Below are positions 1 to 49,942 of a stretch of 50,704 nt of DNA, piece by piece; positions within the stretch are counted from its first letter, which is position 1, and each line of letters opens with the position of its first letter. Source of the DNA: Macrostomum lignano (Eukaryota); contig NIVC01000813.1 of assembly GCA_002269645.1 (NCBI GenBank), positions 1-50,704 of the forward strand. The letters are read 5' to 3'. The translations under genes and the position numbers were made by a program. The notes under the pieces are model-generated. The model had not been told where the DNA came from. It saw nothing but the letters and a program-made list of their open reading frames with translations, and made no database searches.

Positions 1-31
<31 letters not shown>

Positions 32-639
32 GGCTTGTGAGCAGCAAGTGAACCAAATGACGGATGCAGCGGCGAGATCAGAATGCTCGCTGCTGATCGT
101 TAAAGCGCATTCTTGTCTCTTAGGCATGTCGCTGGCGTTGCTGACTTCAGAAGCTGCGAGGAAAAGAAATCAATTAAGATAGGCTTGCTTTAGTAATCAT
201 TAATAGGCTATAAAGGAACCCTTTAATAGAACGTGTTCAACTAATGCTGGGTCTGTTTTGAAAAGTCAGAACTCAGAAGTAGTCGCGATTAGAATCAGTA
301 TTGTCCCAATAAGTGCGACCCAACAAATGCTGTTCAAAAAATAGGCCTGGCTGCAATGTCCCAATAAATGCCCAACAAATTACTAGCCTTGAGCTAGGCT
401 GGGCTGTGTTTACTATTCATTGCGTTTGTAGCTTGTGTCCCAACAATGCCACTGAGATTGTTGCATTGCTTTTGAATTGTGCTCTACCAGGTAACACAAG
501 TACTCTGGTGTACAATACTTCTACAGCAGATAATACTCACCCAAAACAGATCGTCTCTTTCTCTTTAATCCTGTGCCGACGGGTTTTCTTCAGATCCACC
601 AGAAAATTCACAAATAGACTGACTGCCTGCACGGATAGC

Positions 640-672
<33 letters not shown>

Positions 673-1280
673 GCTTGTGAGCAGCAAGTGAACCAAATGA
701 CGGATGCAGCGGCGAGATCAGAATGCTCGCTGCTGATCGTTAAAGCGCATTCTTGTCTCTTAGGCATGTCGCTGGCGTTGCTGACTTCAGAAGCTGCGAG
801 GAAAAGAAATCAATTAAGATAGGCTTGCTTTAGTAATCATTAATAGGCTATAAAGGAACCCTTTAATAGAACGTGTTCAACTAATGCTGGGTCTGTTTTG
901 AAAAGTCAGAACTCAGAAGTAGTCGCGATTAGAATCAGTATTGTCCCAATAAGTGCGACCCAACAAATGCTGTTCAAAAAATAGGCCTGGCTGCAATGTC
1001 CCAATAAATGCCCAACAAATTACTAGCCTTGAGCTAGGCTGGGCTGTGTTTACTATTCATTGCGTTTGTAGCTTGTGTCCCAACAATGCCACTGAGATTG
1101 TTGCATTGCTTTTGAATTGTGCTCTACCAGGTAACACAAGTACTCTGGTGTACAATACTTCTACAGCAGATAATACTCACCCAAAACAGATCGTCTCTTT
1201 CTCTTTAATCCTGTGCCAGACGGGTTTTCTTCAGATCCACCAGAAAATTCACAAATAGACTGACTGCCTGCACGGATAGC

Positions 1281-1313
<33 letters not shown>

Positions 1314-3200
1314 GGCTTGTGAGCAGCAAGTGAACCAAATGACGGATGCAGCGGCGAGATCAGAATGCTCGCTGCTGATCGTTAAAGCGCATTCTTGTCT
1401 CTTAGGCATGTCGCTGGCGTTGCTGACTTCAGAAGCTGCGAGGAAAAGAAATCAATTAAGATAGGCTTGCTTTAGTAATCATTAATAGGCTATAAAGGAA
1501 CCCTTTAATAGAACGTGTTCAACTAATGCTGGGTCTGTTTTGAAAAGTCAGAACTCAGAAGTAGTCGCGATTAGAATCAGTATTGTCCCAATAAGTGCGA
1601 CCCAACAAATGCTGTTCAAAAAATAGGCCTGGCTGCAATGTCCCAATAAATGCCCAACAAATTACTAGCCTTGAGCTAGGCTGGGCTGTGTTTACTATTC
1701 ATTGCGTTTGTAGCTTGTGTCCCAACAATGCCACTGAGATTGTTGCATTGCTTTTGAATTGTGCTCTACCAGGTAACACAAGTACTCTGGTGTACAATAC
1801 TTCTACAGCAGATAATACTCACCCAAAACAGATCGTCTCTTTCTCTTTAATCCTGTGCCAGACGGGTTTTCTTCAGATCCACCAGAAAATTCACAAATAG
1901 ACTGACTGCCTGCACGGATAGCGGCTGCTGCTGCTGCTGCTGCTGCTGCTGCGGCTTGTGAGCAGCAAGTGAACCAAATGACGGATGCAGCGGCGAGATC
2001 AGAATGCTCGCTGCTGATCGTTAAAGCGCATTCTTGTCTCTTAGGCATGTCGCTGGCGTTGCTGACTTCAGAAGCTGCGAGGAAAAGAAATCAATTAAGA
2101 TAGGCTTGCTTTAGTAATCATTAATAGGCTATAAAGGAACCCTTTAATAGAACGTGTTCAACTAATGCTGGGTCTGTTTTGAAAAGTCAGAACTCAGAAG
2201 TAGTCGCGATTAGAATCAGTATTGTCCCAATAAGTGCGACCCAACAAATGCTGTTCAAAAAATAGGCCTGGCTGCAATGTCCCAATAAATGCCCAACAAA
2301 TTACTAGCCTTGAGCTAGGCTGGGCTGTGTTTACTATTCATTGCGTTTGTAGCTTGTGTCCCAACAATGCCACTGAGATTGTTGCATTGCTTTTGAATTG
2401 TGCTCTACCAGGTAACACAAGTACTCTGGTGTACAATACTTCTACAGCAGATAATACTCACCCAAAACAGATCGTCTCTTTCTCTTTAATCCTGTGCCAG
2501 ACGGGTTTTCTTCAGATCCACCAGAAAATTCACAAATAGACTGACTGCCTGCACGGATAGCGGCTGCTGCTGCTGCTGCTGCTGCTGCTGCGGCTTGTGA
2601 GCAGCAAGTGAACCAAATGACGGATGCAGCGGCGAGATCAGAATGCTCGCTGCTGATCGTTAAAGCGCATTCTTGTCTCTTAGGCATGTCGCTGGCGTTG
2701 CTGACTTCAGAAGCTGCGAGGAAAAGAAATCAATTAAGATAGGCTTGCTTTAGTAATCATTAATAGGCTATAAAGGAACCCTTTAATAGAACGTGTTCAA
2801 CTAATGCTGGGTCTGTTTTGAAAAGTCAGAACTCAGAAGTAGTCGCGATTAGAATCAGTATTGTCCCAATAAGTGCGACCCAACAAATGCTGTTCAAAAA
2901 ATAGGCCTGGCTGCAATGTCCCAATAAATGCCCAACAAATTACTAGCCTTGAGCTAGGCTGGGCTGTGTTTACTATTCATTGCGTTTGTAGCTTGTGTCC
3001 CAACAATGCCACTGAGATTGTTGCATTGCTTTTGAATTGTGCTCTACCAGGTAACACAAGTACTCTGGTGTACAATACTTCTACAGCAGATAATACTCAC
3101 CCAAAACAGATCGTCTCTTTCTCTTTAATCCTGTGCCAGACGGGTTTTCTTCAGATCCACCAGAAAATTCACAAATAGACTGACTGCCTGCACGGATAGC

Positions 3201-3236
<36 letters not shown>

Positions 3237-3845
3237 GGCTTGTGAGCAGCAAGTGAACCAAATGACGGATGCAGCGGCGAGATCAGAATGCTCGCTGCTG
3301 ATCGTTAAAGCGCATTCTTGTCTCTTAGGCATGTCGCTGGCGTTGCTGACTTCAGAAGCTGCGAGGAAAAGAAATCAATTAAGATAGGCTTGCTTTAGTA
3401 ATCATTAATAGGCTATAAAGGAACCCTTTAATAGAACGTGTTCAACTAATGCTGGGTCTGTTTTGAAAAGTCAGAACTCAGAAGTAGTCGCGATTAGAAT
3501 CAGTATTGTCCCAATAAGTGCGACCCAACAAATGCTGTTCAAAAAATAGGCCTGGCTGCAATGTCCCAATAAATGCCCAACAAATTACTAGCCTTGAGCT
3601 AGGCTGGGCTGTGTTTACTATTCATTGCGTTTGTAGCTTGTGTCCCAACAATGCCACTGAGATTGTTGCATTGCTTTTGAATTGTGCTCTACCAGGTAAC
3701 ACAAGTACTCTGGTGTACAATACTTCTACAGCAGATAATACTCACCCAAAACAGATCGTCTCTTTCTCTTTAATCCTGTGCCAGACGGGTTTTCTTCAGA
3801 TCCACCAGAAAATTCACAAATAGACTGACTGCCTGCACGGATAGC

Positions 3846-3878
<33 letters not shown>

Positions 3879-4487
3879 GGCTTGTGAGCAGCAAGTGAAC
3901 CAAATGACGGATGCAGCGGCGAGATCAGAATGCTCGCTGCTGATCGTTAAAGCGCATTCTTGTCTCTTAGGCATGTCGCTGGCGTTGCTGACTTCAGAAG
4001 CTGCGAGGAAAAGAAATCAATTAAGATAGGCTTGCTTTAGTAATCATTAATAGGCTATAAAGGAACCCTTTAATAGAACGTGTTCAACTAATGCTGGGTC
4101 TGTTTTGAAAAGTCAGAACTCAGAAGTAGTCGCGATTAGAATCAGTATTGTCCCAATAAGTGCGACCCAACAAATGCTGTTCAAAAAATAGGCCTGGCTG
4201 CAATGTCCCAATAAATGCCCAACAAATTACTAGCCTTGAGCTAGGCTGGGCTGTGTTTACTATTCATTGCGTTTGTAGCTTGTGTCCCAACAATGCCACT
4301 GAGATTGTTGCATTGCTTTTGAATTGTGCTCTACCAGGTAACACAAGTACTCTGGTGTACAATACTTCTACAGCAGATAATACTCACCCAAAACAGATCG
4401 TCTCTTTCTCTTTAATCCTGTGCCAGACGGGTTTTCTTCAGATCCACCAGAAAATTCACAAATAGACTGACTGCCTGCACGGATAGC

Positions 4488-4520
<33 letters not shown>

Positions 4521-5129
4521 GGCTTGTGAGCAGCAAGTGAACCAAATGACGGATGCAGCGGCGAGATCAGAATGCTCGCTGCTGATCGTTAAAGCGCATT
4601 CTTGTCTCTTAGGCATGTCGCTGGCGTTGCTGACTTCAGAAGCTGCGAGGAAAAGAAATCAATTAAGATAGGCTTGCTTTAGTAATCATTAATAGGCTAT
4701 AAAGGAACCCTTTAATAGAACGTGTTCAACTAATGCTGGGTCTGTTTTGAAAAGTCAGAACTCAGAAGTAGTCGCGATTAGAATCAGTATTGTCCCAATA
4801 AGTGCGACCCAACAAATGCTGTTCAAAAAATAGGCCTGGCTGCAATGTCCCAATAAATGCCCAACAAATTACTAGCCTTGAGCTAGGCTGGGCTGTGTTT
4901 ACTATTCATTGCGTTTGTAGCTTGTGTCCCAACAATGCCACTGAGATTGTTGCATTGCTTTTGAATTGTGCTCTACCAGGTAACACAAGTACTCTGGTGT
5001 ACAATACTTCTACAGCAGATAATACTCACCCAAAACAGATCGTCTCTTTCTCTTTAATCCTGTGCCAGACGGGTTTTCTTCAGATCCACCAGAAAATTCA
5101 CAAATAGACTGACTGCCTGCACGGATAGC

Positions 5130-5165
<36 letters not shown>

Positions 5166-5774
5166 GGCTTGTGAGCAGCAAGTGAACCAAATGACGGATG
5201 CAGCGGCGAGATCAGAATGCTCGCTGCTGATCGTTAAAGCGCATTCTTGTCTCTTAGGCATGTCGCTGGCGTTGCTGACTTCAGAAGCTGCGAGGAAAAG
5301 AAATCAATTAAGATAGGCTTGCTTTAGTAATCATTAATAGGCTATAAAGGAACCCTTTAATAGAACGTGTTCAACTAATGCTGGGTCTGTTTTGAAAAGT
5401 CAGAACTCAGAAGTAGTCGCGATTAGAATCAGTATTGTCCCAATAAGTGCGACCCAACAAATGCTGTTCAAAAAATAGGCCTGGCTGCAATGTCCCAATA
5501 AATGCCCAACAAATTACTAGCCTTGAGCTAGGCTGGGCTGTGTTTACTATTCATTGCGTTTGTAGCTTGTGTCCCAACAATGCCACTGAGATTGTTGCAT
5601 TGCTTTTGAATTGTGCTCTACCAGGTAACACAAGTACTCTGGTGTACAATACTTCTACAGCAGATAATACTCACCCAAAACAGATCGTCTCTTTCTCTTT
5701 AATCCTGTGCCAGACGGGTTTTCTTCAGATCCACCAGAAAATTCACAAATAGACTGACTGCCTGCACGGATAGC

Positions 5775-5807
<33 letters not shown>

Positions 5808-7052
5808 GCTTGTGAGCAGCAAGTGAACCAAATGACGGATGCAGCGGCGAGATCAGAATGCTCGCTGCTGATCGTTAAAGCGCATTCTTGTCTCTTAGGC
5901 ATGTCGCTGGCGTTGCTGACTTCAGAAGCTGCGAGGAAAAGAAATCAATTAAGATAGGCTTGCTTTAGTAATCATTAATAGGCTATAAAGGAACCCTTTA
6001 ATAGAACGTGTTCAACTAATGCTGGGTCTGTTTTGAAAAGTCAGAACTCAGAAGTAGTCGCGATTAGAATCAGTATTGTCCCAATAAGTGCGACCCAACA
6101 AATGCTGTTCAAAAAATAGGCCTGGCTGCAATGTCCCAATAAATGCCCAACAAATTACTAGCCTTGAGCTAGGCTGGGCTGTGTTTACTATTCATTGCGT
6201 TTGTAGCTTGTGTCCCAACAATGCCACTGAGATTGTTGCATTGCTTTTGAATTGTGCTCTACCAGGTAACACAAGTACTCTGGTGTACAATACTTCTACA
6301 GCAGATAATACTCACCCAAAACAGATCGTCTCTTTCTCTTTAATCCTGTGCCAGACGGGTTTTCTTCAGATCCACCAGAAAATTCACAAATAGACTGACT
6401 GCCTGCACGGATAGCGGCTGCTGCTCTGCTGCTGCTGCTGCTGCGGCTTGTGAGCAGCAAGTGAACCAAATGACGGATGCAGCGGCGAGATCAGAATGCT
6501 CGCTGCTGATCGTTAAAGCGCATTCTTGTCTCTTAGGCATGTCGCTGGCGTTGCTGACTTCAGAAGCTGCGAGGAAAAGAAATCAATTAAGATAGGCTTG
6601 CTTTAGTAATCATTAATAGGCTATAAAGGAACCCTTTAATAGAACGTGTTCAACTAATGCTGGGTCTGTTTTGAAAAGTCAGAACTCAGAAGTAGTCGCG
6701 ATTAGAATCAGTATTGTCCCAATAAGTGCGACCCAACAAATGCTGTTCAAAAAATAGGCCTGGCTGCAATGTCCCAATAAATGCCCAACAAATTACTAGC
6801 CTTGAGCTAGGCTGGGCTGTGTTTACTATTCATTGCGTTTGTAGCTTGTGTCCCAACAATGCCACTGAGATTGTTGCATTGCTTTTGAATTGTGCTCTAC
6901 AGGTAACACAAGTACTCTGGTGTACAATACTTCTACAGCAGATAATACTCACCCAAAACAGATCGTCTCTTTCTCTTTAATCCTGTGCCAGACGGGTTTT
7001 CTTCAGATCCACCAGAAAATTCACAAATAGACTGACTGCCTGCACGGATAGC

Positions 7053-7085
<33 letters not shown>

Positions 7086-7694
7086 GGCTTGTGAGCAGCA
7101 AGTGAACCAAATGACGGATGCAGCGGCGAGATCAGAATGCTCGCTGCTGATCGTTAAAGCGCATTCTTGTCTCTTAGGCATGTCGCTGGCGTTGCTGACT
7201 TCAGAAGCTGCGAGGAAAAGAAATCAATTAAGATAGGCTTGCTTTAGTAATCATTAATAGGCTATAAAGGAACCCTTTAATAGAACGTGTTCAACTAATG
7301 CTGGGTCTGTTTTGAAAAGTCAGAACTCAGAAGTAGTCGCGATTAGAATCAGTATTGTCCCAATAAGTGCGACCCAACAAATGCTGTTCAAAAAATAGGC
7401 CTGGCTGCAATGTCCCAATAAATGCCCAACAAATTACTAGCCTTGAGCTAGGCTGGGCTGTGTTTACTATTCATTGCGTTTGTAGCTTGTGTCCCAACAA
7501 TGCCACTGAGATTGTTGCATTGCTTTTGAATTGTGCTCTACCAGGTAACACAAGTACTCTGGTGTACAATACTTCTACAGCAGATAATACTCACCCAAAA
7601 CAGATCGTCTCTTTCTCTTTAATCCTGTGCCAGACGGGTTTTCTTCAGATCCACCAGAAAATTCACAAATAGACTGACTGCCTGCACGGATAGC

Positions 7695-7727
<33 letters not shown>

Positions 7728-8336
7728 GGCTTGTGAGCAGCAAGTGAACCAAATGACGGATGCAGCGGCGAGATCAGAATGCTCGCTGCTGATCGTTAAA
7801 GCGCATTCTTGTCTCTTAGGCATGTCGCTGGCGTTGCTGACTTCAGAAGCTGCGAGGAAAAGAAATCAATTAAGATAGGCTTGCTTTAGTAATCATTAAT
7901 AGGCTATAAAGGAACCCTTTAATAGAACGTGTTCAACTAATGCTGGGTCTGTTTTGAAAAGTCAGAACTCAGAAGTAGTCGCGATTAGAATCAGTATTGT
8001 CCCAATAAGTGCGACCCAACAAATGCTGTTCAAAAAATAGGCCTGGCTGCAATGTCCCAATAAATGCCCAACAAATTACTAGCCTTGAGCTAGGCTGGGC
8101 TGTGTTTACTATTCATTGCGTTTGTAGCTTGTGTCCCAACAATGCCACTGAGATTGTTGCATTGCTTTTGAATTGTGCTCTACCAGGTAACACAAGTACT
8201 CTGGTGTACAATACTTCTACAGCAGATAATACTCACCCAAAACAGATCGTCTCTTTCTCTTTAATCCTGTGCCAGACGGGTTTTCTTCAGATCCACCAGA
8301 AAATTCACAAATAGACTGACTGCCTGCACGGATAGC

Positions 8337-8372
<36 letters not shown>

Positions 8373-9040
8373 GGCTTGTGAGCAGCAAGTGAACCAAATG
8401 ACGGATGCAGCGGCGAGATCAGAATGCTCGCTGCTGATCGTTAAAGCGCATTCTTGTCTCTTAGGCATGTCGCTGGCGTTGCTGACTTCAGAAGCTGCGA
8501 GGAAAAGAAATCAATTAAGATAGGCTTGCTTTAGTAATCATTAATAGGCTATAAAGGAACCCTTTAATAGAACGTGTTCAACTAATGCTGGGTCTGTTTT
8601 GAAAAGTCAGAACTCAGAAGTAGTCGCGATTAGAATCAGTATTGTCCCAATAAGTGCGACCCAACAAATGCTGTTCAAAAAATAGGCCTGGCTGCAATGT
8701 CCCAATAAATGCCCAACAAATTACTAGCCTTGAGCTAGGCTGGGCTGTGTTTACTATTCTTTGCGTTTGTAGCTTGTGTCCCAACAATGCCACTGAGATT
8801 GTTGCATTGCTTTTGAATTGTGCTCTATCAGGTAACACAAGTACTCTGGTGTACAATACTTCTACAGCAGATAATACTCACCCAAAACAGATCGTCTCTT
8901 TCTCTTTAATCCTGTGCCAGACGGGTTTTCTTCAGATCCACCAGAAAATTCACAAATAGACTGACTGCCTGCACGGATAGCGGCTGCTGCTGCTGCGGCT
9001 TGTGAGCAGCAAGTGAACCAAATGACGGATGCAGCGGCGA
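1..9040. repeat. Tandem array of ~638-645 bp units (14 complete plus a partial one running off the window start), each with a variable (CTG)n tract
   Basis: The identical 101-aa plus-strand ORF recurs at 313, 953, 1595, 2234, 2873, 3518, 4160, 4802, 5447, 6088, 6726, 7367, 8009 and 8654. Spacing varies mostly by multiples of 3 because of CTG number. The array ends at ~9040 where unique sequence begins. Confidence 0.97.
541..8494 (-). CDS. 13 tandem chimeric exons (~252-258 nt each; 10 in frame, 3 with 1-2 nt deletions), e.g. 8237-8494
   Basis: Each unit has acceptor ttgatttcttttcctcgcag| and donor |gtgagt with open frame SEVSNASDMPKRQECALTISSEHSD-LAAASVIWFTCCSQ(A)12-14IRAG...LKRKRRSVL. Whether they are spliced is unverified. 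Confidence 0.45.
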
Positions 9041-9058
9041 GTTTGAATGCGGATGAAC
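8882..9058 (-). CDS. Putative internal exon (177 nt, phase 1-1) of an unidentified gene; source exon of the tandem array
   Basis: Acceptor ttttcttttgtgcgcccacgcacag| at 9058, donor ttgg|gtgagt at 8882. The open frame SSAFKLAAASVIWFTCCSQAAAAAAAIRAGSQSICEFSGGSEENPSGTGLKRKRRSVL fits the phase-1 acceptor found in each repeat unit. No recognisable family. Confidence 0.6.
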
Positions 9059-11513
9059 CTGTGCGTGGGCGCACAAAAGAAAAATAACTTATTGAGAAAT
9101 CGGTCTGATTTGTTTGAAAACAGATTTAAATGTCGCTGTTCTAATAAATGCTTCATTGTCAATGAAATTTTACTGTACAATTAAAATACTCGAGGTTTGT
9201 CCCAACGCTGCTGCTTGTGTGAGTCAGATGGAGTACAATTTTCACTTTCCCGATAGTGCCGCAACAACTTACTTTCTCACTAGCTGACTGCAGGCAGGCT
9301 TGCTTGTTTTAATAATGCCCTAGAGAACAAAACACTTATTGCAATTGAGTTTCAGTTACTAGGAGTTGCAATTTTCTGAGATCCTATCTCTTTGCTGACC
9401 GCCCATTTTTCCATTCAGATGAGCTTCTTTTTTGCTGCTGACTCTGCCCTGCTTTTCTTTCGGCGTTTGCCTTTGCAGTAAGCTTTGTTTCTCGTTCTAG
9501 AATGCTGTCATTTTTATACTGTTCTTTAGTTATGCAATAGCACTGCTTTGGGTAAAAAAATAATTCGACTATCGAATTATAACAGTAATATATTACATTA
9601 GTTGCCCAGAAAACTCACATAGTATTTCTCCAAGTCTCTAGTACTGTGGGCGATGTGTCGTGCGAGATTTCTTTCCCAAATGTTTTGATTGAAACTTCTA
9701 GTAAAATTTGTTCTTCCTAGAAGTGTAAATTTTGCCTACTTATGATTGCTCAACTGGCTGTTGTAAATTAATTGATAAATAAGGTGATCGTTCCGCCTCT
9801 CTTATATTTCACTGAGCTCAGAGTATTACTAGGCTGCTTATTATTTTTTTCAACGTACAAAAATACGACATATACGAGTACGAGACAATACTTACTGGAC
9901 AATGAAGGCAAATCTGTTTGTTATAGAAGAAAACGGTAAGCTTATCGATATCAACGTATCTGGAATTTTAGAAAAGACATATGTAAATTCCAGTTAAGTT
10001 TTTATTTAATCATAAAATTTTAAAAAGAATTTTAAATTCTACTTACATATGTGTAATGGTTCCTAGCCAAGTCTTTTCATGCCAGGTCATGCATGGTAAC
10101 TCTTGTGACGTGGCACATTTTGTCTGTGTAGTGCAGGTCTCGTAAATGAATTATATTCGTTTGAACATATGCAGTACGCCGTTTGTCAAAGGGAACTTCT
10201 ACATGTACCTTTCCGTTAGAATTGGCTCTTCCTCTTGTAGACCTCAACTTCAGTGTAAACTTTATCCTGACTCCCTTGCGCCCGCCTCTCCTCCCCGCTC
10301 CCCCCCCCGCGATAGGAATGTACACGTGGCCTGGGTAAGGGATTGCCTGGGTCTTGTACACGCTTGTCCTAACACTTCTGCACTGTACGTGGGTTTATCT
10401 TTACGATCCAAGATAAGGCCTAGTAGTTTTTTCATGTTTTTCAGGAAGGCCTAGTAGTTAGTTTTGGGCCAACTAGTCATCGATTTCGACTTTACAGTGA
10501 CAGTGACACGCAAACATGTGCTAGCAGTCCATGCAGTCATCTAAGTTTCTTGGTATCTCAGTACATTTCAGTATACCAGACGATAATTATCACAATTCTA
10601 GAAAACATTTTGCTGCATAGTATGGCTGCCAAAACCCAGGCCAATAAGGAAGTCATTTAAAGCCTTAGAGATTAAACGTTTCCCTTTAATACTCGTCCTT
10701 GGTTTTCTCGGGAAATGCAAAGTTTTTCTTTGCCCTTTATTTCTTTGCTCTAAAAGCGCTTCATAAGACTGAGAATTTCCACCGGAAAACTACCTCACTC
10801 AAAGTGTCACTTTACGTTAATGGCCTCCAGTCACTAACTTGAGTCCGTTAATCCCATTCACATATGACAAATAGATTAATGCAGCGGATTTAAAACGAGA
10901 ATTTCAGTTAAAATGGCCGAGGGCACAGGCGGATGTAACCTTAATTTGCCATGTTTCGTGTATAAGTGAAATTGGAAGCTAATGAATTTAGATGCTAGCT
11001 GTTTCTATGCAAAAATCTAAATATACTAAATCTATAAGGTTTGTATGCTTGATTGTAATATTCTAAATCTTTATTAAATTATTTCATATTTTATAGTAAA
11101 CACGATGCCAAATGTCAGGATCCTTTCAAGTGTCGATTGGCAGCCCTGTGGAGAACCTCTATCTGTTACTTGTAGTAGACTTTCTTGATATTGTAAGAAA
11201 TATTGTAATAAAACGAGAATTCCGATTTGAGACCCAATTGTTCTGTTGGATCAGACCATCAGTTCGCATAATTTTTTAAACTTCTTAGGACACTGCAAAT
11301 CATTAGATTCCCCGTGTTTGATTAAAAATATGAAAAAATGACATTGATTTTTGAAAGGAGAATCGAAAGACGGTTCCAATGAATATTTTTTCATTTCAAT
11401 AGACTTCATTTTTGGAAGTGTCGGGACGCACTTATTGGGCCTGGCCCAACACATTTTTGGTCCTAATAGCACGGGTCAGTTTATACACGCTTGTCCCAAG
11501 AAATGCCTAATGC

Positions 11514-11514
11514 A

Positions 11515-11547
<33 letters not shown>
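11514..11547. repeat. (CA)n microsatellite
   Basis: Directly visible; it explains the HTHT/CVCV ORFs. Confidence 0.95.
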
Positions 11548-15525: not shown

Positions 15526-22397
<6,872 letters not shown>

Positions 22398-27099: not shown

Positions 27100-27510
27100 T
27101 ACTGATTACCACAGTCGGTTTTGCGTTAGAGGAGATAAAAACAAATATACAATTTTTAGTCCTATAAAAACTCACAGAAAGCTTCAAGCAATTGCGCACG
27201 TGCGCGCAGTCCGAACCTGCCTCTCTTCTAATTTTGAAAAATTGCACCGTTTTCTTTATCGATTATAACAAAAAAAGCTTGCTAGCGATGAAAAGTATTT
27301 TGAAAGTTAATAATAGTTCAGTAAAATATGCTAAATGAAGGTGAAAAAGAAAATGTATTATAAACATATTTCTTTGTCTTTAACATCAATGGAATGTCTA
27401 CAGACTCAAACATACATTTAACATTGTATTTTTTAGTTCTTTAATCGAATGCGCATTGCATTCTGTTGGGGTCTATCAATCGCGAATACTGTACGAAACA
27501 CGAAGTAGTT
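27100..27510. promoter_or_regulatory. Probable bidirectional promoter region between BAG1 and CLUAP1
   Basis: Divergent ATGs lie 411 bp apart. There is a possible 74-nt BAG1 5'UTR intron at 27102-27175 (gtgagt...aatcag). Confidence 0.55.
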
Positions 27511-30500
27511 ATGTCATTCAGAGACATAAGAAGCTTTACAGAAATGATGAGAGCTCTAGGGTACCCTAGACTCATCAGCATGGAAAACTTTCGTTCCCCT
27601 AACTTTCGACTTGTTGCTGAAATCCTCGTTTGGTTGGCAAAACGCTTCGACCCAGGCATGGATATACCAAAAGAGATCGACAGCGAACAAGATCGAGTGA
27701 TTTTTATTAAAATGGTTGCTCAGAGTATGGCACTTAAAGCTCATATCAAGCTAAACACGAAGAAGCTTTATCAAGCCGATGGTCATGCAGTAAAAGAGCT
27801 CCTAAAAATGACATCCCAGTTGTATCAGGCAATGAAAAACATTAATTCTGGTTCAGCAACAAGTCAAAATGAAAGCTCTTTGAGTCTTGGAGCAGCCAAG
27901 GTAAGCAACTTTAATTAAAAAGTTTTTACTTTTTACTTTATTTTGTTCATTTAAGTTAAGTACTTAGGGCAGTTGCTTCTTTGGGCTAGTGTTAATTGTG
28001 TTGATCTATTTTGAATGCTTACTTTATTAAAATTTTAGATTTTTTTAGAATTTTACTCGTACAAAAGCAAATTTATTTTTTCTTTACTGTTTTATTTGTG
28101 AAGTAGAATTTTTTTTAAAGTATAAAATGTAAGGGATCTTTTTTAAACTGAGATTTTACTTCTTTGTTTATTATATTCAATTTATTTCTTTACATATCCC
28201 TTTTTAGCCACACGAGATCAAAGAATGCCGACGACTCGCGTCAGAAATCACCTCCCGCGGCGCCGCCCTGTACGACCTGCTAAACCGGGAGCCTGACCTA
28301 AGAGATTTACGTTCTCTGGCGCTAGCCCGCCAGTTGGAGACAACTCAAGTTGAGAAGGGCATCCGCGGCAATATCAAAACTATCGAGGCCGAATTAAAGA
28401 AGACTCAATCAGCTTTGGAGAACATTGCAAGCGACGAGGCGAATTTGCAAGCTAAAATTGATAAGAAGAAAAGCGAGCTGGAACGAAATCAGAAACGACT
28501 GAGCACGTTGCAGGTGATCATTAGAATAATTTGTGGAGGTTGTTGCGCCAAACTATAGGCATCAGTGGCGTCAAACTATAGTCATCAGTGGCGTCAAACT
28601 ATAGGCATCAGTGGCGTCAAACTATAGTCATCAGTGGCATCAAACTATAGGCATCAGTGGCGTCAAACTATAGGCATCAGTGGCGTCAAACTATAGTAAT
28701 CAGTGGCGTCAAACTATATGCATCAGTGGCGTCAAACTATAGGCATCAGTGGCGTCAAACTATAGTCATCAGTGGCGCCAAACTATATGCATCAGTGGCG
28801 TCAAACTATAGGCATCAGTGGCGTCAAACTATAGTCATCAGTGGCGCCAAACTATATGCATCAGTGGCGTCAAACTATATGCATCAGTGGCGTCAAACTA
28901 TAGTCATCAGTGGCGTCAAACTATATGCATCAGTGGCGTCAAACTATAGGCATCAGTGGCGTCAAACTATATGCATCAGTGGCATCAAACTATAGGCATC
29001 AGTGGCGTCAAACTATAGGCATCAGTGGCGTCAAACTATAGTAATCAGTGGCGTCAAACTATATGCATCAGTGGCGTCAAACTATAGGCATCAGTGGCGT
29101 CAAACTATAGTCATCAGTGGCGCCAAACTATATGCATCAGTGGCGTCAAACTATAGGCATCAGTGGCGTCAAACTATAGTCATCAGTGGCGTCAAACTAT
29201 ATGCATCAGTGGCGTCAAACTATATGCATCAGTGGCGTCAAACTATAGTCATCAGTGGCGTCAAACTATATGCATCAGTGGCGTCAAACTATAGGCATCA
29301 GTGGCGTCAAACTATATGCATCAGTGGCGTCAAACTATTGGCATCAGTGGCGTCAAACTATAGTCATCAGTGGCGCCAAACTATATGCATCAGTGGCGTC
29401 AAACTATAGTCATCAGTGGCGCCAAACTATATGCATCAGTGGCGTCAAACTATAGGCATCAGTGGCGTCAAACTATAGTCATCAGTGGCGCCAAACTATA
29501 TGCATCAGTGGCGCCAAACTATATGCATCAGTGGCGCCAAACTATATGCATCAGTGGCGCCAAACTATATGCATCAGTGGCGTCAAACTATAGTCATCAG
29601 TGGCGTCAAACTATATGCATCAGTGGCGTCAAACTATAGGCATCAGTGGCGTCAAACTATATGCATCAGTGGCGTCAAACTATATGCATCAGTGGCGTCA
29701 AACTATAGGCATCAGTGGCGTCAAACTATAGTCATCAGTGGCGTCAAACTATATGCATCAGTGGCGTCAAACTATATGCATCAGTGGCGTCAAACTATAT
29801 GCATCAGTGGCGTCAAACTATAGTCATCAGTGGCGCCAAACTATATGCATCAGTGGCGTCAAACTATAGTCATCAGTGGCGCCAAACTATATGCATCAGT
29901 GGCGCCAAACTATATGCATCAGTGGCGTCAAACTATAGTCATCAGTGGCGTCAAACTATATGCATCAGTGGCGTCAAACTATAGGCATCAGTGGCGTCAA
30001 ACTAAAGTCATCAGTGGCGCCAAACTATATGCATCAGTGGCGCCAAACTATATGCATCAGTGGCGTCAAACTATAGTCATCAGTGGCGCCAAACTATAGG
30101 CATCAGTGGCGCCAAACATAGACATCAGTAGCGCCAAACTATAGACATTAGTGGCGCTAAACTATAGAAAACAGCAGGAGCATCAGCAGTGTTTAGCATC
30201 AGAAGAACAGCATTTAAATTAGATTTAATATGATACACTACTATTAGTAGGTCAAAAGCGACGTATCTATAAAAAAACGAAAAATAAGATTTAAAAAACC
30301 ATTTGAACACACGCGCAGGCTGTCCGACCTGCCTACATGGACGAATACGAGCGTATCGAAGAGGAACTCGACCGACTCTATCGGATTTATCTGTTAAAAT
30401 TTCGCAATCTCAGCTTTTTGGAGGCTCAATACGAAGAATTCTGCCGTTCGGAGCGCGAGCAGACGGCCGCCGAGCTGGAGAGGACGGCTGAGGCGGCGGC

Positions 30501-32790: not shown

Positions 32791-39723
<6,933 letters not shown>

Positions 39724-43452: not shown

Positions 43453-44811
43453 TCTACTCCGGCTGTCCGGAAAGTCGTGAGAATGTATTTAAAAAATCAG
43501 TCAGAACTATCAGAAAACACGATAACAGCACTAGTTGGTAATGTAATCTCCCCTTGCATTGATTACAGCTTGGAAATGGTCAACGAGTCGCTGAACCTCT
43601 CTTTTCAAGCAATCTTCGTCAAGGCCTCTTGCCCATTGCAATGCAGCTTCTCGAACTTCATTGTGGTCGCTGAACACTCGCCTGGAGAGATCAGTCTTCA
43701 TCCAACTGAACAAAAAAACGGTCGCACAGATTGAAGTCTGGGCTGTAAGGACTCTGAAACACCAGCTGAACTCCACGGGACTCCATGTACTGCTGCACAG
43801 AACGGGCTACTTGAGGTTGCGCATTGTCCCACTGCCAAAGAACATCCGACAGGTGAATTGGCTTTGACCTCAGAGTACGCCATAGGTCTCCGGTGTGCCG
43901 AATGAACTCAACTATGCCATCTGCATCAACAGTTTGCTTTGGGGCTGTGGATTCAATGGAGAAGCGCTTGCTTGGAGTGAAAGCAACTAGAAGCATTGTC
44001 TTTGCATTCCCGACTGAGTGCCTGACAACCTGGGGCCGATGATCCCCTTGGCCAAGCCAGCACCTGTTGTTTTGCTTTGTGCCAGTGTTTTTCAGGTACA
44101 CCCACGTCTCATCCTCTACCACGTACTTGTCGCAAAAGTTTTCCATGCCCTCGTTGTAAAAGCCTGCGAATTTGCTTGGCACAATTGATGCGAGCAGTCT
44201 TGTTCTCCTCGGATAGAGCATGCGGAACCCAGACAGCAGAAACTTTTCGAAGGTGCAAATCCTCAGTAAAAATTTCGTGCACTGTTGTTTTTCCAACTTC
44301 CAAAAAGTCAGCGAGGTCTCGGACACTAACTTTTGGATCCTCTTCAACAAGAGCTCGGCAGGTTTCGATCAGTTCCGCTATCCTTGTTGACCGTGGCCGG
44401 CCAGTCCGAGGAGCTGAGACCGGGGGAAATGCTTCGTCACGGAACTTTGAATACCATCTGTAAACCGTTGACTGACCTGATGCAGCATCTCTATAAACTT
44501 TAAGCAGCTCGTCATGGCAGCTGAGAGCGGAGATTCCAAGACGGTATCTAGCATAGGCATAACCCTGGAAGTCTTCCATTTTGAAGAACTCGCTGTCAAA
44601 ATTTTCAAGCTTGATCATCGCGTTGCATTTGCTATTGAGCACTTTATACTGAGCTTGCCCCTGCCCCCAATTTTGCTACTAGAATAACAAGAATTTTCAC
44701 CATAGACATCTATGAGTCTATTATTGAAATTTTATGTGTGCCACATCAACAGCTTGCTGCTTTCTTGCTTAATTGACACATTCTCACGACTTTCCGGACA
44801 GCCGAAGTAGA
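43453..44811 (-). mobile_element. Full-length mariner (Tc1/mariner DD34D) transposon, 1359 bp
   Basis: 34-bp TIRs at 43453-43486 and 44778-44811 (1 mismatch), flanked by TA on both sides. Confidence 0.97.
43531..44618 (-). CDS. Mariner transposase split by two +1 frameshifts (~44160 and ~43715)
   Basis: HTH region STVYRW, GRPR, WVPHAL, DETW, WDNA, YSPDFNLCD (34 residues between the 2nd and 3rd Asp) and C-terminal RGDY, distributed across three overlapping ORFs. Confidence 0.92.
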
Positions 44812-45984: not shown

Positions 45985-48959
45985 GGGTAGTGGGGATACA
46001 TTATCAAGCATGCTGTTTTACCAGAATCTCTATTTAAAGATAATTTGTCTATTTTCTAGTGTGTATTTATAATTTTCTTCAAAAATTAGTTTTAGAAGAG
46101 TTTATATTTATACTATGAGAAGTATTGGTCCTATTTTCAAAAAAATTTTTTGGGTTAGCCCAACTTTTGTAAAGCTCATTGGACAGCCTAATATTATTAG
46201 CATCCCCTTTGCGCTTATTATATCAAAGCTTCTTTAACTTTAAGTCATAGATTAACCCTCTAACTTACTCTTCATTTAATACTTGGTTTACCTACAACTT
46301 CTAATTGACCTTTGACATCTTAGCAAGCCCTTGACCTTGAGTCTTGACATTTTATGATACCATTTGTTGCAAAAATGCAATAGATTAGATAGGTATCTAT
46401 AAAAAAATATTGGTTTTAACTTACAAAAAAATTAAGATTTGCTTAATTATTTATTGATATATCTATATATTATTAAATAACTAAGTTTAAACCTATAAAA
46501 ATGTAAAAAAATAATTTGACCTTAAGTTAAACTATTAAATTAAGTAGCTCTTTTAACTTTTAAATTCTATCTTTTTAATTTCAGCAACCTATAATTACAA
46601 ATAAACAACTTGCAAAAGTCAGATACTTTTGCTAACAGGCTTAATAGCAAATAGCAAGCTTTAAACACTAACCAGGCACTTGACACAATAGCAAACTATA
46701 TAGAAAACTTTGCTTAGGCCAAGTTTGCCTGTCCTTGGCCACACTTGTAGCAGCAGTAGTAAGCATTGTGTTTCTTCCAGTTGTCTGGTTATCAATTAAT
46801 AGTAGCAATGGATAGAAACAAAAAATATCAGTCTACAGCATTTGCTATTGCTAATACTAGCTATATTGGGCATTGGTGGTGGCTAGGCAAACTTGTTGCC
46901 AATCTGTTTGGTTATGCCACTGTTCTGCTTGCTATCTATTTTGCTGTTCAGTTTTGGAAGCAATATTGCAACAGTCAGCATGATGGCAATAGTAATAAGG
47001 TTTGTTTTAATTGAACTGCAATTTTTATCTTTAATAATTTAGTTTTAATTTTAATTGACTGCACTAGTTATCTTAAATCCTTATGTATAGGCTAATTTGC
47101 ATAGCACTGGGGTCACCATTCTTGCTCTACCTTTACTGCAAGCTTAGATCCACAATTTTTAGGCTTCAGTCTTGCCCTGTTGAAAATGTTATCATGACTG
47201 GAATCACTAAAGAGTCATTGCAAATACCTCACTAGTGATTCTAGTGACTCTTGTGATTTTTAATGATTCAAAATACTGCAATGTAACAGAGAGGAATCTG
47301 TTAAGTCACATGTGCATCACTTGAGTTGAGTTGCAAAATCTTAAAATTGCAGTGTGATGTGACTATAGGATGCTTAATGGCCTAGGTAACATTTTCATTA
47401 GGTGCAGTGCATTTGGAATCCTTGATCCAGTCAGGATGCTTAATTCAAAACCTGGATACCCGCTGGAATCAGTGGAAAAATAAAAAATAAAATAAAATGC
47501 CAACCAACATCTTGCAGTTGGGTTGTTGGGAAAGTTTCCAGACTAAGTTTACATGAACAAAATGAATTTTCCAAAAAAAGCTCTAATTTTTTTTCCTAAA
47601 ATCTTGCACAGCTGCTGTTACTCATAAATGGGGGTACAAGTGAAAATGCAAGCAATTTGACATGCTGAACAAAGCAAGCCAGAATAAAGTGCCATTGGCT
47701 CTCCTTTTAATCCCATAGTCCAAAGGATTTTTTGTTGATGGATTGCTTCGTTTGAGTGACTGAAAAATCAGCAGCTTAAAAGTGCAAGTTGCTCTGTCTC
47801 ACCCAAACTTAATTAGGTCGACTTTTTGTTATTTTTTTATATTCAATCAGCAAGTTCTCTGTGGTCAATATTTTCAAATCGTTACATAAAAACTCATGCA
47901 TACATTCACCATTTAACAGAACAGCTGTTCAAGAAGTTTTGGCACAAATTTCAGCTCATTTGTACATTTGGACATTGCTGTCGTTCACAGTAAACACAGT
48001 CTGGAAACTTTTGTTTGCTTTTTACTTCGATTTCAACACCCTCATACTTTAAGTACAAACAATTTACTTCCAGTTTAGGTTCATATATAGTCGCTCCAGT
48101 TTTGATTTGATCATTTCAAATTTAAGCTTCATTTTTATGCAGCTTCAACCCCAATCCAGGTAGCATGGAGAAGGGGGGTTTTAGGATGGGGAGATTCTTC
48201 ATGAGAGTGAATTTTGGTACCAGTTTTGATCAGATCATAACTTAGGTTAAATAAATAAACATAAGTTTCCAATACACTAGTTGAAATATTTAAATAAATT
48301 AAATAATTTTTGTCAGACTGTTCAACCCGGATCAGCTGAAGCTAAAGGGCCTACAAAAGAATCTGCAGCAGTGGAAAATTCTCCCAATTCGGTATCTAAC
48401 ATCTGTCGTTTAGTCGGCTGTTTTCTCGGCTTGCAAGCGGCCTATTTAACTTGGGGGTGCTGCAGGAACAGGTAATGACCACGGTTTATCATGCTGGCGA
48501 TGGAACAGCTGGTGCTGGCGAAAAATTCACCGATTCACAGTTTCTCGTATTCACTAATCGATTATTGGCTGGCTGCGTTGCTACCTGCCTACTGGTTGCT
48601 TGTCGGCTTGCTCAAGGAGACAACAGCAGCACGTCTGCAGTTGAAACCGAAGCCTCAGTGCTGGATTATGCCTATTGCTCATTGTCTAATGTGCTAAGCG
48701 CCTGGTGCCAATATGAAGCTCTGCTATTTGTCAGCTTTCCAACTCAGGTGCTGGCCAAGGCTTGCAAAATTGTGCCAGTAATGCTAATGGGCAAGCTGGT
48801 GTCGCGTAGGACCTACAGGCTGGACGAATACGGAACGGCGGTGCTTATCAGTGCCGGTAGGGATAAGTCAATATTTTTATTTTTACTATTGTCAAGTAAG
48901 AGCTTTTCGGATCTAGCTAATCCTGTACAATCTAAATTAAAAGCAATTGTAGTGGTTTA

Positions 48960-49720
48960 TTAAGAATCGTCTCTATTCTAAGATGATTATTCTAAGAATC
49001 TCCCTTCATCGTTTTAGTAATCTCCCTTTCAATATTCTTAAGAATTGCCTCTCGAGATTCTAGGAATCGCCATCGCGTTCACCATTCTTAAGAATAATCA
49101 TATTTCACCATTCTAAGATCGCCTCTCACAATTCTAGGAATCGCCCCTTTCACAATTCTAAGAATCGCCCTAGATTTCAACATATTAGGAACTACCCTAG
49201 CCTTCACCATTCTAAGAATCACCCCTTTCACAATTCTAAGAATCGCCTAGCTTTCACCATTCTAAGAATCACCACTTTCACAATTCTAACAATCGTCCTA
49301 GCTTTCACAGTTCTAAGAGCCACCACTTTCACAATTCTAAGAATCGCCACTTTCACAATTCTAAGAATCGCCCTAGCTTTCACCATTCTAAGAATCGCCC
49401 TAGCTTTCACAATTCTAAGAATCGCCACTTTCACAATTCTAAGAATCGCCACTTTCACAATTCTAAGAATTTCCCTTTCACAATTTTAAGAATCCCCACT
49501 TTCAAAATTTTAAGAATTGCCACTTTCACAATTCTAAGAATTTCCCTTTCACAATTTTAAGAATCCCCACTTTCAAAATTTTAAGAATTGCCCTTTCCCA
49601 ATTCTAAGAATCGCCACTTTCACAATTCTAAAAATTGCCCTTTCACAATTCTAAGAATCACACTAGCTTTCGCCATTCTAAGAATCGCCCTAGACTTCGC
49701 CATTCTAAGAATCGCCACTT
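48960..49720. repeat. ~24/29-bp minisatellite in an SLC35B2 intron
   Basis: Repeated TTCAC(A/C)ATTCTAAGAATCGCC(ACT/CTAGCT). Confidence 0.92.
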
Positions 49721-49942
49721 CATCTTTTTAAGCAATCGCCCTACAGTAAACTTCAATAATATTGTGGTTGCATCTGATTTACGTTATCTGTCAATCTACA
49801 TTTCTCAGGCACTAGCATATTTCTACTGTCGTCCAGTTCGAAGTCCAGCGTCCGTCATCACCAAAGGCGTCAGTGGCGACAGCTTAAGGCGTTCCGCCCT
49901 CCTGGCTGGCTACATGCTATTCGATTCGTTTACCAGCACCTG

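What the first reader, a model, noticed from the sequence alone, without database searches (positions are those of the whole stretch)
1..9058. 9-kb intragenic array amplifying a chimeric, splice-competent exon at least 13 times
Seen: on the minus strand each ~642-bp unit is one intron plus one hybrid exon, made of the 5' part of exon n+1 fused to the 3' part of exon n. Each has a strong acceptor (tttcttttcctcgcag) and donor (gtgagt), is phase 1-1, and 10 of 13 complete copies are a multiple of 3 with an open frame. Inference: if spliced, the mRNA encodes 13 or more ~85-aa modules (ASEVSNASDMPKRQECALTISSEHSDLAAASVIWFTCCSQ-polyA-IRAG...LKRKRRSVL). Each module has a basic NLS-like patch, and because the exons are symmetric any subset could be skipped. 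What looks like a satellite may therefore be a length-tunable repeat protein in formation. The edge unit has two private substitutions (near 8760 and 8827) and a shorter tract, as expected for a real amplified array.
Basis: partly seen in the sequence, partly recalled or inferred. Interest (0 to 1): 0.75.

Follow-up and report, generated by a model that had tools for sequence, protein, structure and literature searches.

The report
Spliced exon-bearing tandem repeat, flatworm
A 642-bp unit holding one exon and one intron is repeated at least 14 times in the flatworm Macrostomum lignano; its RNA is spliced, but the sequence changes as if unselected and lies on a multi-copy element, so it is more likely a transcribed repeat than a new repeat protein.

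Summary
Window 1-9058 (minus strand) holds one edge exon, 13 complete array exons and one exon cut by the window start. Units are 638-645 bp with the stated splice sites, and 10 of 13 exons are in frame.

The organism is Macrostomum lignano. RNA-seq-based gene models from four other copies join the exons at the predicted sites, so the exons are splice-competent. The models also use one cryptic acceptor and two cryptic donors, and these switch between the Ala and Gln frames.

- **Not a simple chimera.** The terminal exon, seen in two copies, contains the segment supposedly donated by "exon n".
- **Probably not intragenic.** Four models start at the first base of exon n, so it is probably a trans-spliced first exon.
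- **Dispersed.** About 2.5 kb upstream, the array and about 1 kb downstream recur in at least five unrelated contexts with 4, 7, 10, at least 14 and at least 16 units.
- **No sign of selection.** Exon and intron diverge equally, 8 of 10 exon changes are non-synonymous, and a stop codon has spread to 11 of 16 exons in one copy.
- **No relatives or fold.** No homologues exist outside this species, and no confident fold is predicted.

Best reading: a young, neutrally evolving, transcribed exon-intron repeat. A functional repeat protein is unlikely (about 0.2).

The parts
1..9058 (-). Tandem array of 638-645-bp units, each one exon plus one intron. It holds the edge unit, 13 complete units and one unit cut by the window start, and it continues beyond position 1.
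8882..9058 (-). Edge exon ('exon n', 177 nt). It has its own acceptor cgcacag|GTTCATCC, donor GG|gtgagt and a short (CAG)4 tract. It is probably the spliced-leader trans-spliced first exon.
   Evidence: Models P0022, P0024, P0025 and P0026 start at its first base. The SL sequence ends in ATG (PMC8629364).
8237..8494 (-). Array exon 1 (258 nt, Ala frame open)
7595..7849 (-). Array exon 2 (255 nt, open). It is the reference unit for the alternative sites: cryptic acceptor B with first exon base 7785, cryptic donor B (GGCA|GTCAGT) with last exon base 7679, and cryptic donor C (ACCC|GTCTGG) with last exon base 7636.
   Evidence: The junction peptides appear in the proteins.
6953..7207 (-). Array exon 3 (255 nt, open)
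6316..6566 (-). Array exon 4 (251 nt). The frame is broken by a 1-nt deletion inside a shortened CAG tract.
5675..5928 (-). Array exon 5 (254 nt). The frame is broken by a C deletion (AAGCCGCAG to AAGCGCAG).
5030..5287 (-). Array exon 6 (258 nt, open)
4388..4642 (-). Array exon 7 (255 nt, open)
3746..4000 (-). Array exon 8 (255 nt, open)
3101..3358 (-). Array exon 9 (258 nt, open)
2462..2713 (-). Array exon 10 (252 nt, open)
1823..2074 (-). Array exon 11 (252 nt, open)
1181..1435 (-). Array exon 12 (255 nt, open)
541..793 (-). Array exon 13 (253 nt). The frame is broken by two 1-nt deletions, one C and one T.
1..153 (-). The 5' part of a 14th array exon, cut by the window start
9059..11515 (-). 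Upstream arm shared with the other genomic copies (putative promoter and outron). It holds no long ORF and differs by 1.6-3.5% between copies.
11460..11515 (-). Outer ~56 nt of the shared segment. It is similar in inverted orientation to the last ~60 nt of the segment in L001, so it is a candidate terminal inverted repeat.
11513..11546 (.). (CA/TG)17 tract at which similarity to the other copies ends

Best explanation
This is an internal exon-plus-intron tandem repeat (a VNTR or macrosatellite) inside a small transcription unit found only in Macrostomum lignano. That unit is itself a dispersed, multi-copy segment of the genome.

**Structure of each copy**
- About 2.5 kb of upstream DNA.
- A first exon whose acceptor probably receives the spliced leader (inferred).
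- N near-identical 'exon + 387-nt intron' units.
- A terminal exon with an AATAAA signal (seen in L001 and L002).
- About 1 kb of downstream DNA.

**How the array arose and is maintained**
The array grew, and keeps turning over, by unequal recombination between units. This explains four things: unit number differs between copies (4, 7, 10, at least 14, at least 16); interior units are almost identical; variants spread along arrays; and the outermost exons are truncated or diverged.

**What the RNA does**
The RNA is spliced at the strong acceptor and donor of each unit. It is also spliced at one cryptic acceptor and two cryptic donors. The resulting isoforms read either the Ala frame or the Gln frame.

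**Selection**
The sequence evolves as if unselected. Any peptide made is most likely an incidental, de novo ORF product rather than an established repeat protein.

**Shown and inferred**
- Shown: the array anatomy, the copies and their boundaries, the splice junctions in transcript-based models, the substitution pattern, and the absence of homologues.
- Inferred: SL trans-splicing of the first exon, recombination as the mechanism, that the 1-nt deletions are long-read errors, and that the unit is non-functional or non-coding.
For: - **Array and splice sites:**
- **Organism and family:** every protein hit is M. lignano and consists only of this repeat.
- **Transcript basis of the models:** the annotation uses StringTie/TACO plus TransDecoder, with SL and polyA trimmed (PMC5730564).
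- **Junction peptides:**
  - RRSVL|A|SEVS: main acceptor and main donor, 255 nt.
  - IRAG|T/N|SEVS: donor GGCA|GTCAGT, 171 nt.
  - RRSVL|A|SILIS: acceptor ..CAGCAG|CG.
  - KKT|P/H|SEVS and KKT|P|SILIS: donor ACCC|GTCTGG, 150 nt.
  - All are canonical GT-AG sites.
- **Terminal exon:** it carries a stop codon and AATAAA.
- **Other copies:** five copies with different unit numbers and private variants.
- **Boundaries of the shared segment:** they fall at (TG)n tracts, with unrelated DNA beyond them.
- **Neutral pattern:**
  - 9 variable sites in 225 exon nt against 14 in 387 intron nt.
  - In the Ala frame, 8 non-synonymous changes (one a nonsense) against 2 synonymous. The neutral expectation is 23% synonymous.
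  - TGG>TAG is present in 11 of 16 exons of L003.
- **No homologues or fold:** no Pfam domain; no relative among 1.84 billion representatives; AlphaFold2 mean pLDDT 42.5.
- **Start of the transcript:** four models start at base 1 of exon n, and the SL ends in AUG, which is in phase with the Gln frame and not the Ala frame.
Against: - The Ala frame is open in most units of four copies (W, L001, L002, L004 region), and the exon length stays a multiple of 3 despite tract-length changes.
- Composition-matched shuffles give an open, symmetric exon only about 2% of the time.
- One diverged exon (P0027) keeps the same frame at 48% identity with a single in-frame gap, and it has an identical GLKRKRRSVL end. 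This hints at past or present coding constraint.
- Array units are 5-10 times less diverged between copies than the adjoining DNA. That could reflect constraint on the whole unit rather than gene conversion.
- The substitution counts are small (10 exon changes).
- No raw RNA-seq reads, Ribo-seq data or proteomics data could be examined here.
Confidence: 0.6

Rival explanations
1. This is a genuine protein-coding gene in which an amplified symmetric exon encodes 7 to more than 16 tandem modules of about 85 aa. The number of modules would be tuned by unequal crossover and exon skipping. The protein could be nuclear (KRKRR read as an NLS). It could instead be a secreted polyprotein cut at RKRR|S.
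For: - Most exons are open, phase 1-1 and a multiple of 3 in W, L001 and L002.
- TransDecoder ORFs of up to 295 aa appear in the transcript models.
- UniProt labels several of them 'Secreted protein'.
- The diverged exon P0027 keeps the frame and the KRKRRSVL end.
- An open frame this long is expected only 2-7% of the time by chance.
- The frame-breaking differences are 1-nt deletions, which look like long-read errors.
Against: - The substitution pattern is the neutral one: 8 non-synonymous (one a nonsense) to 2 synonymous changes, with equal exon and intron divergence.
- A nonsense codon has spread to 11 of 16 exons in L003.
- Transcript models switch freely into the Gln frame.
- The first AUG of an SL-capped mRNA is out of phase with the Ala frame.
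- There is no homologue outside the species, no domain and no confident fold.
- A protein with 13 or more identical hydrophobic polyAla segments would be unusual.
Confidence: 0.2
2. The shared segment is a non-autonomous DNA transposon bounded by terminal inverted repeats, with an internal tandem array. This resembles tandem-repeat-bearing MITE or Helentron-type elements. The 'exons' would be incidental splice-site-bearing sequence that is transcribed wherever a copy lands. This overlaps with the best explanation, because it addresses how the unit became dispersed.
For: - Similarity between copies stops sharply at the same points in four (5' end) and two (3' end) unrelated genomic contexts.
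- The two ends share about 55 nt of imperfect inverted similarity: score 18 against 9.4 +/- 1.6 in shuffles, with 0 of 500 shuffles reaching it.
- The 7-mer TTGGGAC occurs near both ends in inverted orientation. It occurs 28 times inside the element and 0 times in 13.4 kb of flanking DNA.
- Internal array length varies between copies. In L002 the element sits inside another gene model.
Against: - No transposase ORF is present.
- No clear target-site duplication is seen.
- The 5' limit is not identical in all copies, because W and L004 share about 25 more nt.
- Both ends abut (TG)n tracts, so microsatellite-mediated segmental duplication is an alternative.
- Only five copies could be examined, because no whole-genome search of M. 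lignano was available.
Confidence: 0.3
3. Assembly artefact. The array, or its copy number and perfect identity, was produced by mis-assembly or over-polishing of long reads.
For: - The window's 13 interior units carry no substitutions at all. They carry only 1-nt deletions and tract-length changes, which is the pattern typical of long-read consensus error and polishing.
- Two copies (the window and L003) run into a sequence end.
Against: - Five separate sequences (the window and four Mlig_3_7 contigs) carry the array, each with its own fixed and polymorphic substitutions, unit numbers and flanks.
- Transcript models span several units.
Confidence: 0.04

Closest known systems
Human LPA kringle-IV type 2 VNTR (a 5.5-kb unit with two exons, from 1 to more than 40 copies); from general knowledge
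   Same: An exon-plus-intron unit is repeated head to tail inside a transcription unit. The exons are symmetric, so every unit adds an in-frame module. Units are nearly identical, and copy number differs between alleles or copies through unequal recombination.
   Different: The LPA module is a conserved, folded kringle domain under selection, and the protein is proven. Here the module is an orphan with no predicted fold and a neutral substitution pattern. Cryptic splice sites compete with the main ones, and the whole locus is dispersed in several copies.
Transcribed macrosatellites with ORFs (D4Z4/DUX4, RS447/USP17, CT47, DXZ4); from general knowledge
   Same: Units of hundreds of bp to several kb show very high identity, concerted evolution, copy-number variation and transcription. 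The coding status of the embedded ORF is often doubtful or conditional.
   Different: Those units carry a whole intronless ORF or gene. They do not carry one symmetric exon and one intron spliced unit to unit. At 642 bp, this unit is at the small end of the range.
Transposable elements with internal tandem arrays (Helentron/HINE/DINE-1-type elements, tandem-repeat-containing MITEs); from general knowledge
   Same: Dispersed copies have conserved arms that flank an internal array whose length differs between copies. The terminal regions are inverted-similar, and short motifs are repeated.
   Different: No transposase, hairpin-CTRR end or target-site duplication was identified here. Internal repeats of known elements are not reported to be spliced exon-intron units.
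Tandem exon duplication in animal genes (surveys by Letunic et al. and by Kondrashov and Koonin); from general knowledge
   Same: An exon is duplicated together with its adjacent intron, and reading phase is preserved.
   Different: Such duplications are usually 2-3 copies of an exon from a conserved gene, and they are often spliced in a mutually exclusive way. Here there are 7 to more than 16 copies in an orphan unit.
Polyprotein precursors with dibasic or furin sites between repeated modules (notothenioid AFGP genes, invertebrate neuropeptide precursors); from general knowledge
   Same: Each module ends in RKRR|S, a furin-type motif. AFGP arose de novo by amplification of a short segment at an intron-exon boundary.
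   Different: Those repeats lie within single exons and encode short peptides with a demonstrated function. Here there is no signal-peptide or processing evidence, and the first AUG is out of phase.

Membership tests
Tandem repeat array (VNTR / macrosatellite) | Head-to-tail units of constant length with high identity between units | tested here: met
   There are 14 copies spaced 638-645 bp. Interior units are identical apart from tract length and five 1-nt deletions.
Tandem repeat array (VNTR / macrosatellite) | Unit number varies between copies or alleles | tested here: met
   Unit numbers are at least 14 (window), 7 (L001), 10 (L002), at least 16 (L003) and 4 followed by a break (L004).
Tandem repeat array (VNTR / macrosatellite) | Concerted evolution: variants are shared within an array, and edge units are more diverged | tested here: met
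   Array-specific variants run along neighbouring units. The window's edge unit has two private substitutions. The terminal exon has a diverged tail.
Protein-coding repeat-protein gene | Exons are spliced together in one continuous reading frame | tested here: inconclusive
   Models join exons in the Ala frame. However, 3 of 13 window exons break the frame, and many models change frame through cryptic sites. As assembled, the longest open stretches are 389 and 738 codons.
Protein-coding repeat-protein gene | Purifying selection on the protein (fewer exon than intron changes, excess of synonymous changes, no spread of nonsense alleles) | tested here: not met
   Variable sites are 4.0% in the exon and 3.6% in the intron. 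There are 8 non-synonymous (one a nonsense) and 2 synonymous changes. TAG is present in 11 of 16 L003 exons. The sample is small.
Protein-coding repeat-protein gene | Homologues, a domain or a confident fold | tested here: not met
   There are no Pfam hits. Only the same M. lignano repeat is found among 5.8 billion clustered proteins and 1.84 billion representatives. AlphaFold2 pLDDT is 42.5. One diverged paralogous exon exists.
Protein-coding repeat-protein gene | Evidence of translation | not testable with these tools
   No Ribo-seq or proteomics data were available.
SL trans-spliced gene of M. lignano | SL-containing reads end at the acceptor of the first exon, with no upstream cis donor in use | tested here: inconclusive
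   Four ORF models (P0022, P0024, P0025, P0026) start at the first base after cgcacag|. This is expected when the SL has been trimmed. The acceptor does not match the enriched [T/C]TNCAG motif. Raw reads were not available.
TIR DNA transposon (non-autonomous) with internal array | Dispersed copies with common sharp termini in unrelated contexts | tested here: met
   The 5' end was seen in four contexts and the 3' end in two, with unrelated DNA beyond. The 5' limit differs by up to about 25 nt between copies.
TIR DNA transposon (non-autonomous) with internal array | Terminal inverted repeats and a target-site duplication | tested here: inconclusive
   The ends share about 55 nt of imperfect inverted similarity, about 5 sd above shuffles. 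GTTT and (TG)n lie next to both ends in all copies, so a target-site duplication cannot be told apart from element sequence.
TIR DNA transposon (non-autonomous) with internal array | A related autonomous element encoding a transposase | not tested
   No search of the whole M. lignano genome was possible. There are no ORFs of 90 aa or more in the arms.

The most novel reading that the evidence does not exclude
The array could be a de novo, length-polymorphic polyprotein gene caught early in its history. Under this reading an SL-capped mRNA is translated from the in-exon AUG (MPKRQE...), or from the SL AUG via the cryptic donor (as in model P0026). Translation runs into 7 to more than 16 identical modules. 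These modules are cut apart at RKRR|S, and the dose of the resulting peptide is set by unit number and exon skipping. The gene would be carried on a mobile element that spreads it through the genome.
Probability: 0.12. Interest if true: 0.65.

Novelty: new member of a known kind. Interest (0 to 1): 0.33.

Why it matters
If the neutral reading holds, this is a clean, datable example of a known route by which long ORFs can arise. An exon-intron segment with good splice signals turns into a satellite. It is then transcribed, spliced in several registers and copied around a repeat-rich genome. That gives raw material for de novo repeat proteins, but it is not yet a protein.

It also matters for annotation of M. 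lignano. At least 30 UniProt and GenBank 'proteins' consist only of this repeat. Some are named 'Secreted protein', 'Dymeclin' or 'UCH domain-containing', and they should not be taken at face value.

If the coding reading were true, this would be an invertebrate counterpart of the LPA KIV-2 type of size-polymorphic protein, arising from an orphan sequence.

Tried and rejected
- **Rfam scan of the whole window:** no family matched, and the SL sequence is absent from the window. The array is therefore not an SL-RNA or snRNA gene cluster, which was my first suspicion for a unit of about 640 bp in a flatworm.
- **Pfam on the module:** no hit.
- **P0027, the diverged exon:** its DNA could not be fetched. 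It is not encoded in any locus held here. A second homologue search with it found only itself. No dN/dS estimate on a diverged pair was therefore possible.
- **Third homologue search:** I used it on the first ORF of the opposite-strand TIR_2 gene model of L002, and it found nothing. The extent of that gene remains unverified.
- **P0025:** it is not on record as a called gene.
- **Similarity of the unit to the rest of the window:** only the CAG tract and a 21-nt match at E=0.2 were found. No relation to the neighbouring minisatellites is shown.
- **Upstream cis exons:** three GTAAGT/GTGAGT donor-like sites lie between 9270 and 9900, but this is about the chance number. No model includes upstream sequence, so I dropped the idea of upstream coding exons.
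- **The gene name 'g13':** I first read it as 13 trans-splice cuts. The naming scheme (a 95% cluster prefix plus a member index) does not allow that reading.
- **Literature:** searches for the gene or protein identifiers and for Macrostomum satellites found no description of this repeat.

Full report
**1. What is in the window**

Tandem Repeats Finder sees a (GCT)n tract recurring every ~642 bp from 1 to 8376. The repeat finder gives 14 in-register copies spaced 638-645 bp, 100% identical over a 300-nt core.

On the minus strand the acceptor tttcttttcctcgcag occurs 14 times. Each of the first 13 is followed by an exon that ends GG|gtgagtattatc. The exon lengths are 258, 255, 255, 251, 254, 258, 255, 255, 258, 252, 252, 255 and 253 nt.

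Only the frame starting at the third base is open.

The array starts at an edge exon (9058-8882, 177 nt). This exon has a different 5' end, GTTCATCCGCATTCAAA, behind its own acceptor, and a short CAG tract. Its intron carries two private substitutions, at 8828 and 8760.

Interior units carry no substitutions. They differ only in tract length and by five 1-nt deletions. Three of those deletions create the three out-of-frame exons. Deletions with no substitutions are what long-read consensus errors look like, so I do not count them as decay (inference).

The window begins inside the array, so its far end is not visible here.

**2. Organism and transcripts**

A search with the module returned 28 proteins. 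Every named one is from Macrostomum lignano, and all consist of this repeat alone. An exhaustive HMMER scan of 1.84 billion representatives found only eight proteins of the same repeat family.

The GenBank models (BOX15_ tags, assembly Mlig_3_7) come from RNA-seq-based StringTie/TACO transcripts. ORFs were called by TransDecoder after the spliced leader and poly(A) had been trimmed (PMC5730564).

They also show three further canonical GT-AG sites, which I reproduced from the window sequence:

| Site | Sequence | Effect |
|---|---|---|
| Cryptic donor B | GGCA\|GTCAGT | Junction IRAG\|T/N\|SEVS; exon of 171 nt |
| Cryptic acceptor B | ..ATCAGCAG\|CGAGC | Enters the Gln frame, SILISPLHPSFGSLAAHKPQQQ... 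|
| Cryptic donor C | ACCC\|GTCTGG | Junction KKT\|P/H\|...; acceptor B to donor C gives an exon of 150 nt |

The exons are therefore splice-competent. Splicing is heterogeneous, however, and both the Ala and the Gln frames appear.

**3. The ends of the array**

L001 (NIVC01000487) and L002 (NIVC01000257) contain complete arrays of 7 and 10 array exons. In both, the last exon has three parts:
- the whole 5' part, ASEVS...SEHSD;
- a tail that still matches the array exon at 19 of 27 positions (4 of 20,000 shuffles do as well), then ends in ...LIDEFSGRAGYFLSF*, with AATAAA about 75 nt further on.

At the 5' edge the similarity beyond the identity boundary is weak (p about 0.04).

A separate M. 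lignano model, P0027, has a diverged but full-length exon spliced to a canonical one. It is 48% identical over 62 aa with one in-frame gap.

Together these points show that the array exon is the complete form. The first and last exons are its truncated or diverged edge copies, which is the usual state of array edges. A one-off fusion of two unrelated exons does not fit.

Four models (P0022, P0024, P0025, P0026) begin at the very first base of exon n. The SL had been trimmed before ORF calling, and about 30-39% of M. lignano genes are SL trans-spliced (PMC8629364; PMC5730564). I therefore infer that exon n is an SL-accepting first exon. If so, the array is nearly the entire transcription unit and not an insertion inside a larger gene.

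The SL ends in AUG. That AUG is in phase with the Gln frame of exon n and gives a 51-aa ORF unless cryptic donor C is used. It is not in phase with the Ala frame.

**4. The unit is dispersed**

Five sequences carry the array: the window, L001, L002, L003 (NIVC01001277, at least 16 units, reaching the contig end) and L004 (NIVC01003014, 4 units and then unrelated DNA).

Similarity between them begins at a (TG)n tract about 2.46 kb upstream of exon n (window about 11515-11546). In L001 and L002 it ends at another (TG)n tract about 1 kb past the terminal exon. Beyond these points the DNA is unrelated, with four different upstream contexts and two different downstream contexts.

The copies are therefore not simply the duplicated large chromosome of line DV1. 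The segment behaves as a dispersed repeat.

Three features suggest a non-autonomous inverted-repeat transposon:
- Its first and last ~55 nt are similar in inverted orientation (score 18 against 9.4 +/- 1.6 in shuffles).
- The 7-mer TTGGGAC occurs 28 times inside it and never in 13.4 kb of flanking DNA.
- In L002 it lies within an opposite-strand TIR_2 gene model.

Against this, no target-site duplication or transposase was found, and the 5' limit varies by about 25 nt between copies. I rate the transposon reading at about 0.3. The alternative is segmental duplication at microsatellites.

**5. Selection**

I aligned 43 units from four copies and classified the exon changes.

| Measure | Result |
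|---|---|
| Variable sites, exon outside the tract | 9 in 225 nt (4.0%) |
| Variable sites, intron | 14 in 387 nt (3.6%) |
| Exon changes in the Ala frame | 7 missense, 1 nonsense, 2 synonymous |
| Synonymous fraction expected under neutrality | 23% |

The Gln frame looks no better, with 3 synonymous changes out of 10. The nonsense change (TGG>TAG, giving VI*FTCC) is present in 11 of the 16 array exons of L003. It therefore spread along that array without being removed by selection.

Other tests also fail to support an established protein:
- Pfam finds no domain.
- AlphaFold2 gives a mean pLDDT of 42.5.

Two points favour coding:
- An open, symmetric 255-nt exon is expected in only about 2% of composition-matched shuffles.
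- P0027 keeps the reading frame.

These two points keep the coding hypothesis alive at about 0.2, but they do not outweigh the neutral pattern.

One oddity remains. Array consensus sequences differ by only 0.3-0.5% between copies. The adjoining 1.9 kb differs by 1.6-3.5%, right up to the array edge. This holds for intron and exon alike. I therefore attribute it to exchange between arrays or to very recent array replacement, not to protein constraint (inference).

**6. Verdict**

The reading as an intragenic, chimeric exon building a new tunable nuclear protein is mostly unsupported.

The best account is a young, species-specific exon-plus-intron tandem repeat. It is transcribed and variably spliced, it sits on a dispersed multi-copy segment, it turns over by unequal recombination, and it evolves neutrally.

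It is a new member of known kinds. These include exon-bearing VNTRs such as LPA KIV-2, transcribed macrosatellites and repeat-bearing mobile elements. I found no published description of it.

Interest is moderate to low. It is a tidy example of raw material for de novo repeat ORFs, and a caution for annotation of M. lignano. No step had to be referred.

Noticed in passing
L003:2449-11864 (NIVC01001277): In this copy 11 of 16 array exons carry TGG>TAG, a stop in the Ala frame (VI*FTCC). Two more carry a deletion that gives VICSLAAHKPQQQ. The GenBank model P0003 covers the few units that lack the stop.
   Followed up: yes
L001:4437-12458, with window 9199 and 11493: The 7-mer TTGGGAC is strongly enriched inside the shared element and absent from 13.4 kb of unrelated flanks. 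It occurs near both ends in inverted orientation, three times per array intron, and five times in the 38-bp minisatellite after the terminal exon. It may be a protein-binding motif.
   Followed up: partly
window 9059-11515 compared with 1-9058: Array units differ by only 0.3-0.5% between genomic copies. The directly adjoining 1.9 kb differs by 1.6-3.5%. This suggests exchange between arrays at different loci, or very recent array replacement.
   Followed up: partly
protein P0027 (UniProt A0A1I8FV09); its locus was not found: A diverged full-length version of the exon (48% identity, one in-frame gap, identical GLKRKRRSVL end) is spliced to a canonical exon. It is the only old paralogue seen, and its DNA would allow a real dN/dS test.
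   Followed up: partly
proteins P0012, P0021-P0024, P0028: UniProt names such as Dymeclin, UCH domain-containing, BAF250_C domain-containing and DRIM domain-containing are attached to sequences made entirely of this repeat. The names are misleading.
   Followed up: no
L002:1-20371: In this copy the whole element lies inside a predicted opposite-strand gene model of 981 aa with a TIR_2 domain. I could not recover that protein to check the model.
   Followed up: partly
L004:11385: In the fifth copy the array stops after four units, in mid-intron, and unrelated DNA follows. This is either an insertion or a rearrangement.
   Followed up: no
window 15043-39171 and 49103-49720: The density of minisatellites and microsatellites is very high. 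Examples are 33 bp x80 (19159-21808), 23 bp x70 (28545-30167), 35/74 bp (17290-18738), 33 bp x28 (15797-16733), 55 bp x10 (35455-35998), (AGAC)90 (36938-37298) and (ATAG)218 (38297-39171). This fits the reported 15% of the M. lignano genome made of simple and tandem repeats.
   Followed up: no
window 27466-27918 (+) and onward to about 31.5 kb: Exons of a CLUAP1/IFT38 homologue (Pfam PF10234, E=9e-52). A 23-bp minisatellite of 1.6 kb lies between its exons.
   Followed up: partly
window 48451-50704 (+): Exons of a UAA/SLC35B-type nucleotide-sugar transporter (PF08449, E=2e-17). The gene runs off the window end.
   Followed up: no
window 43691-44642 (-): A mariner/Tc1-like transposase remnant is split into two overlapping ORFs, with weak HTH_32/HTH_48 and DDE_3 hits. 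It is a frameshifted, dead copy.
   Followed up: no
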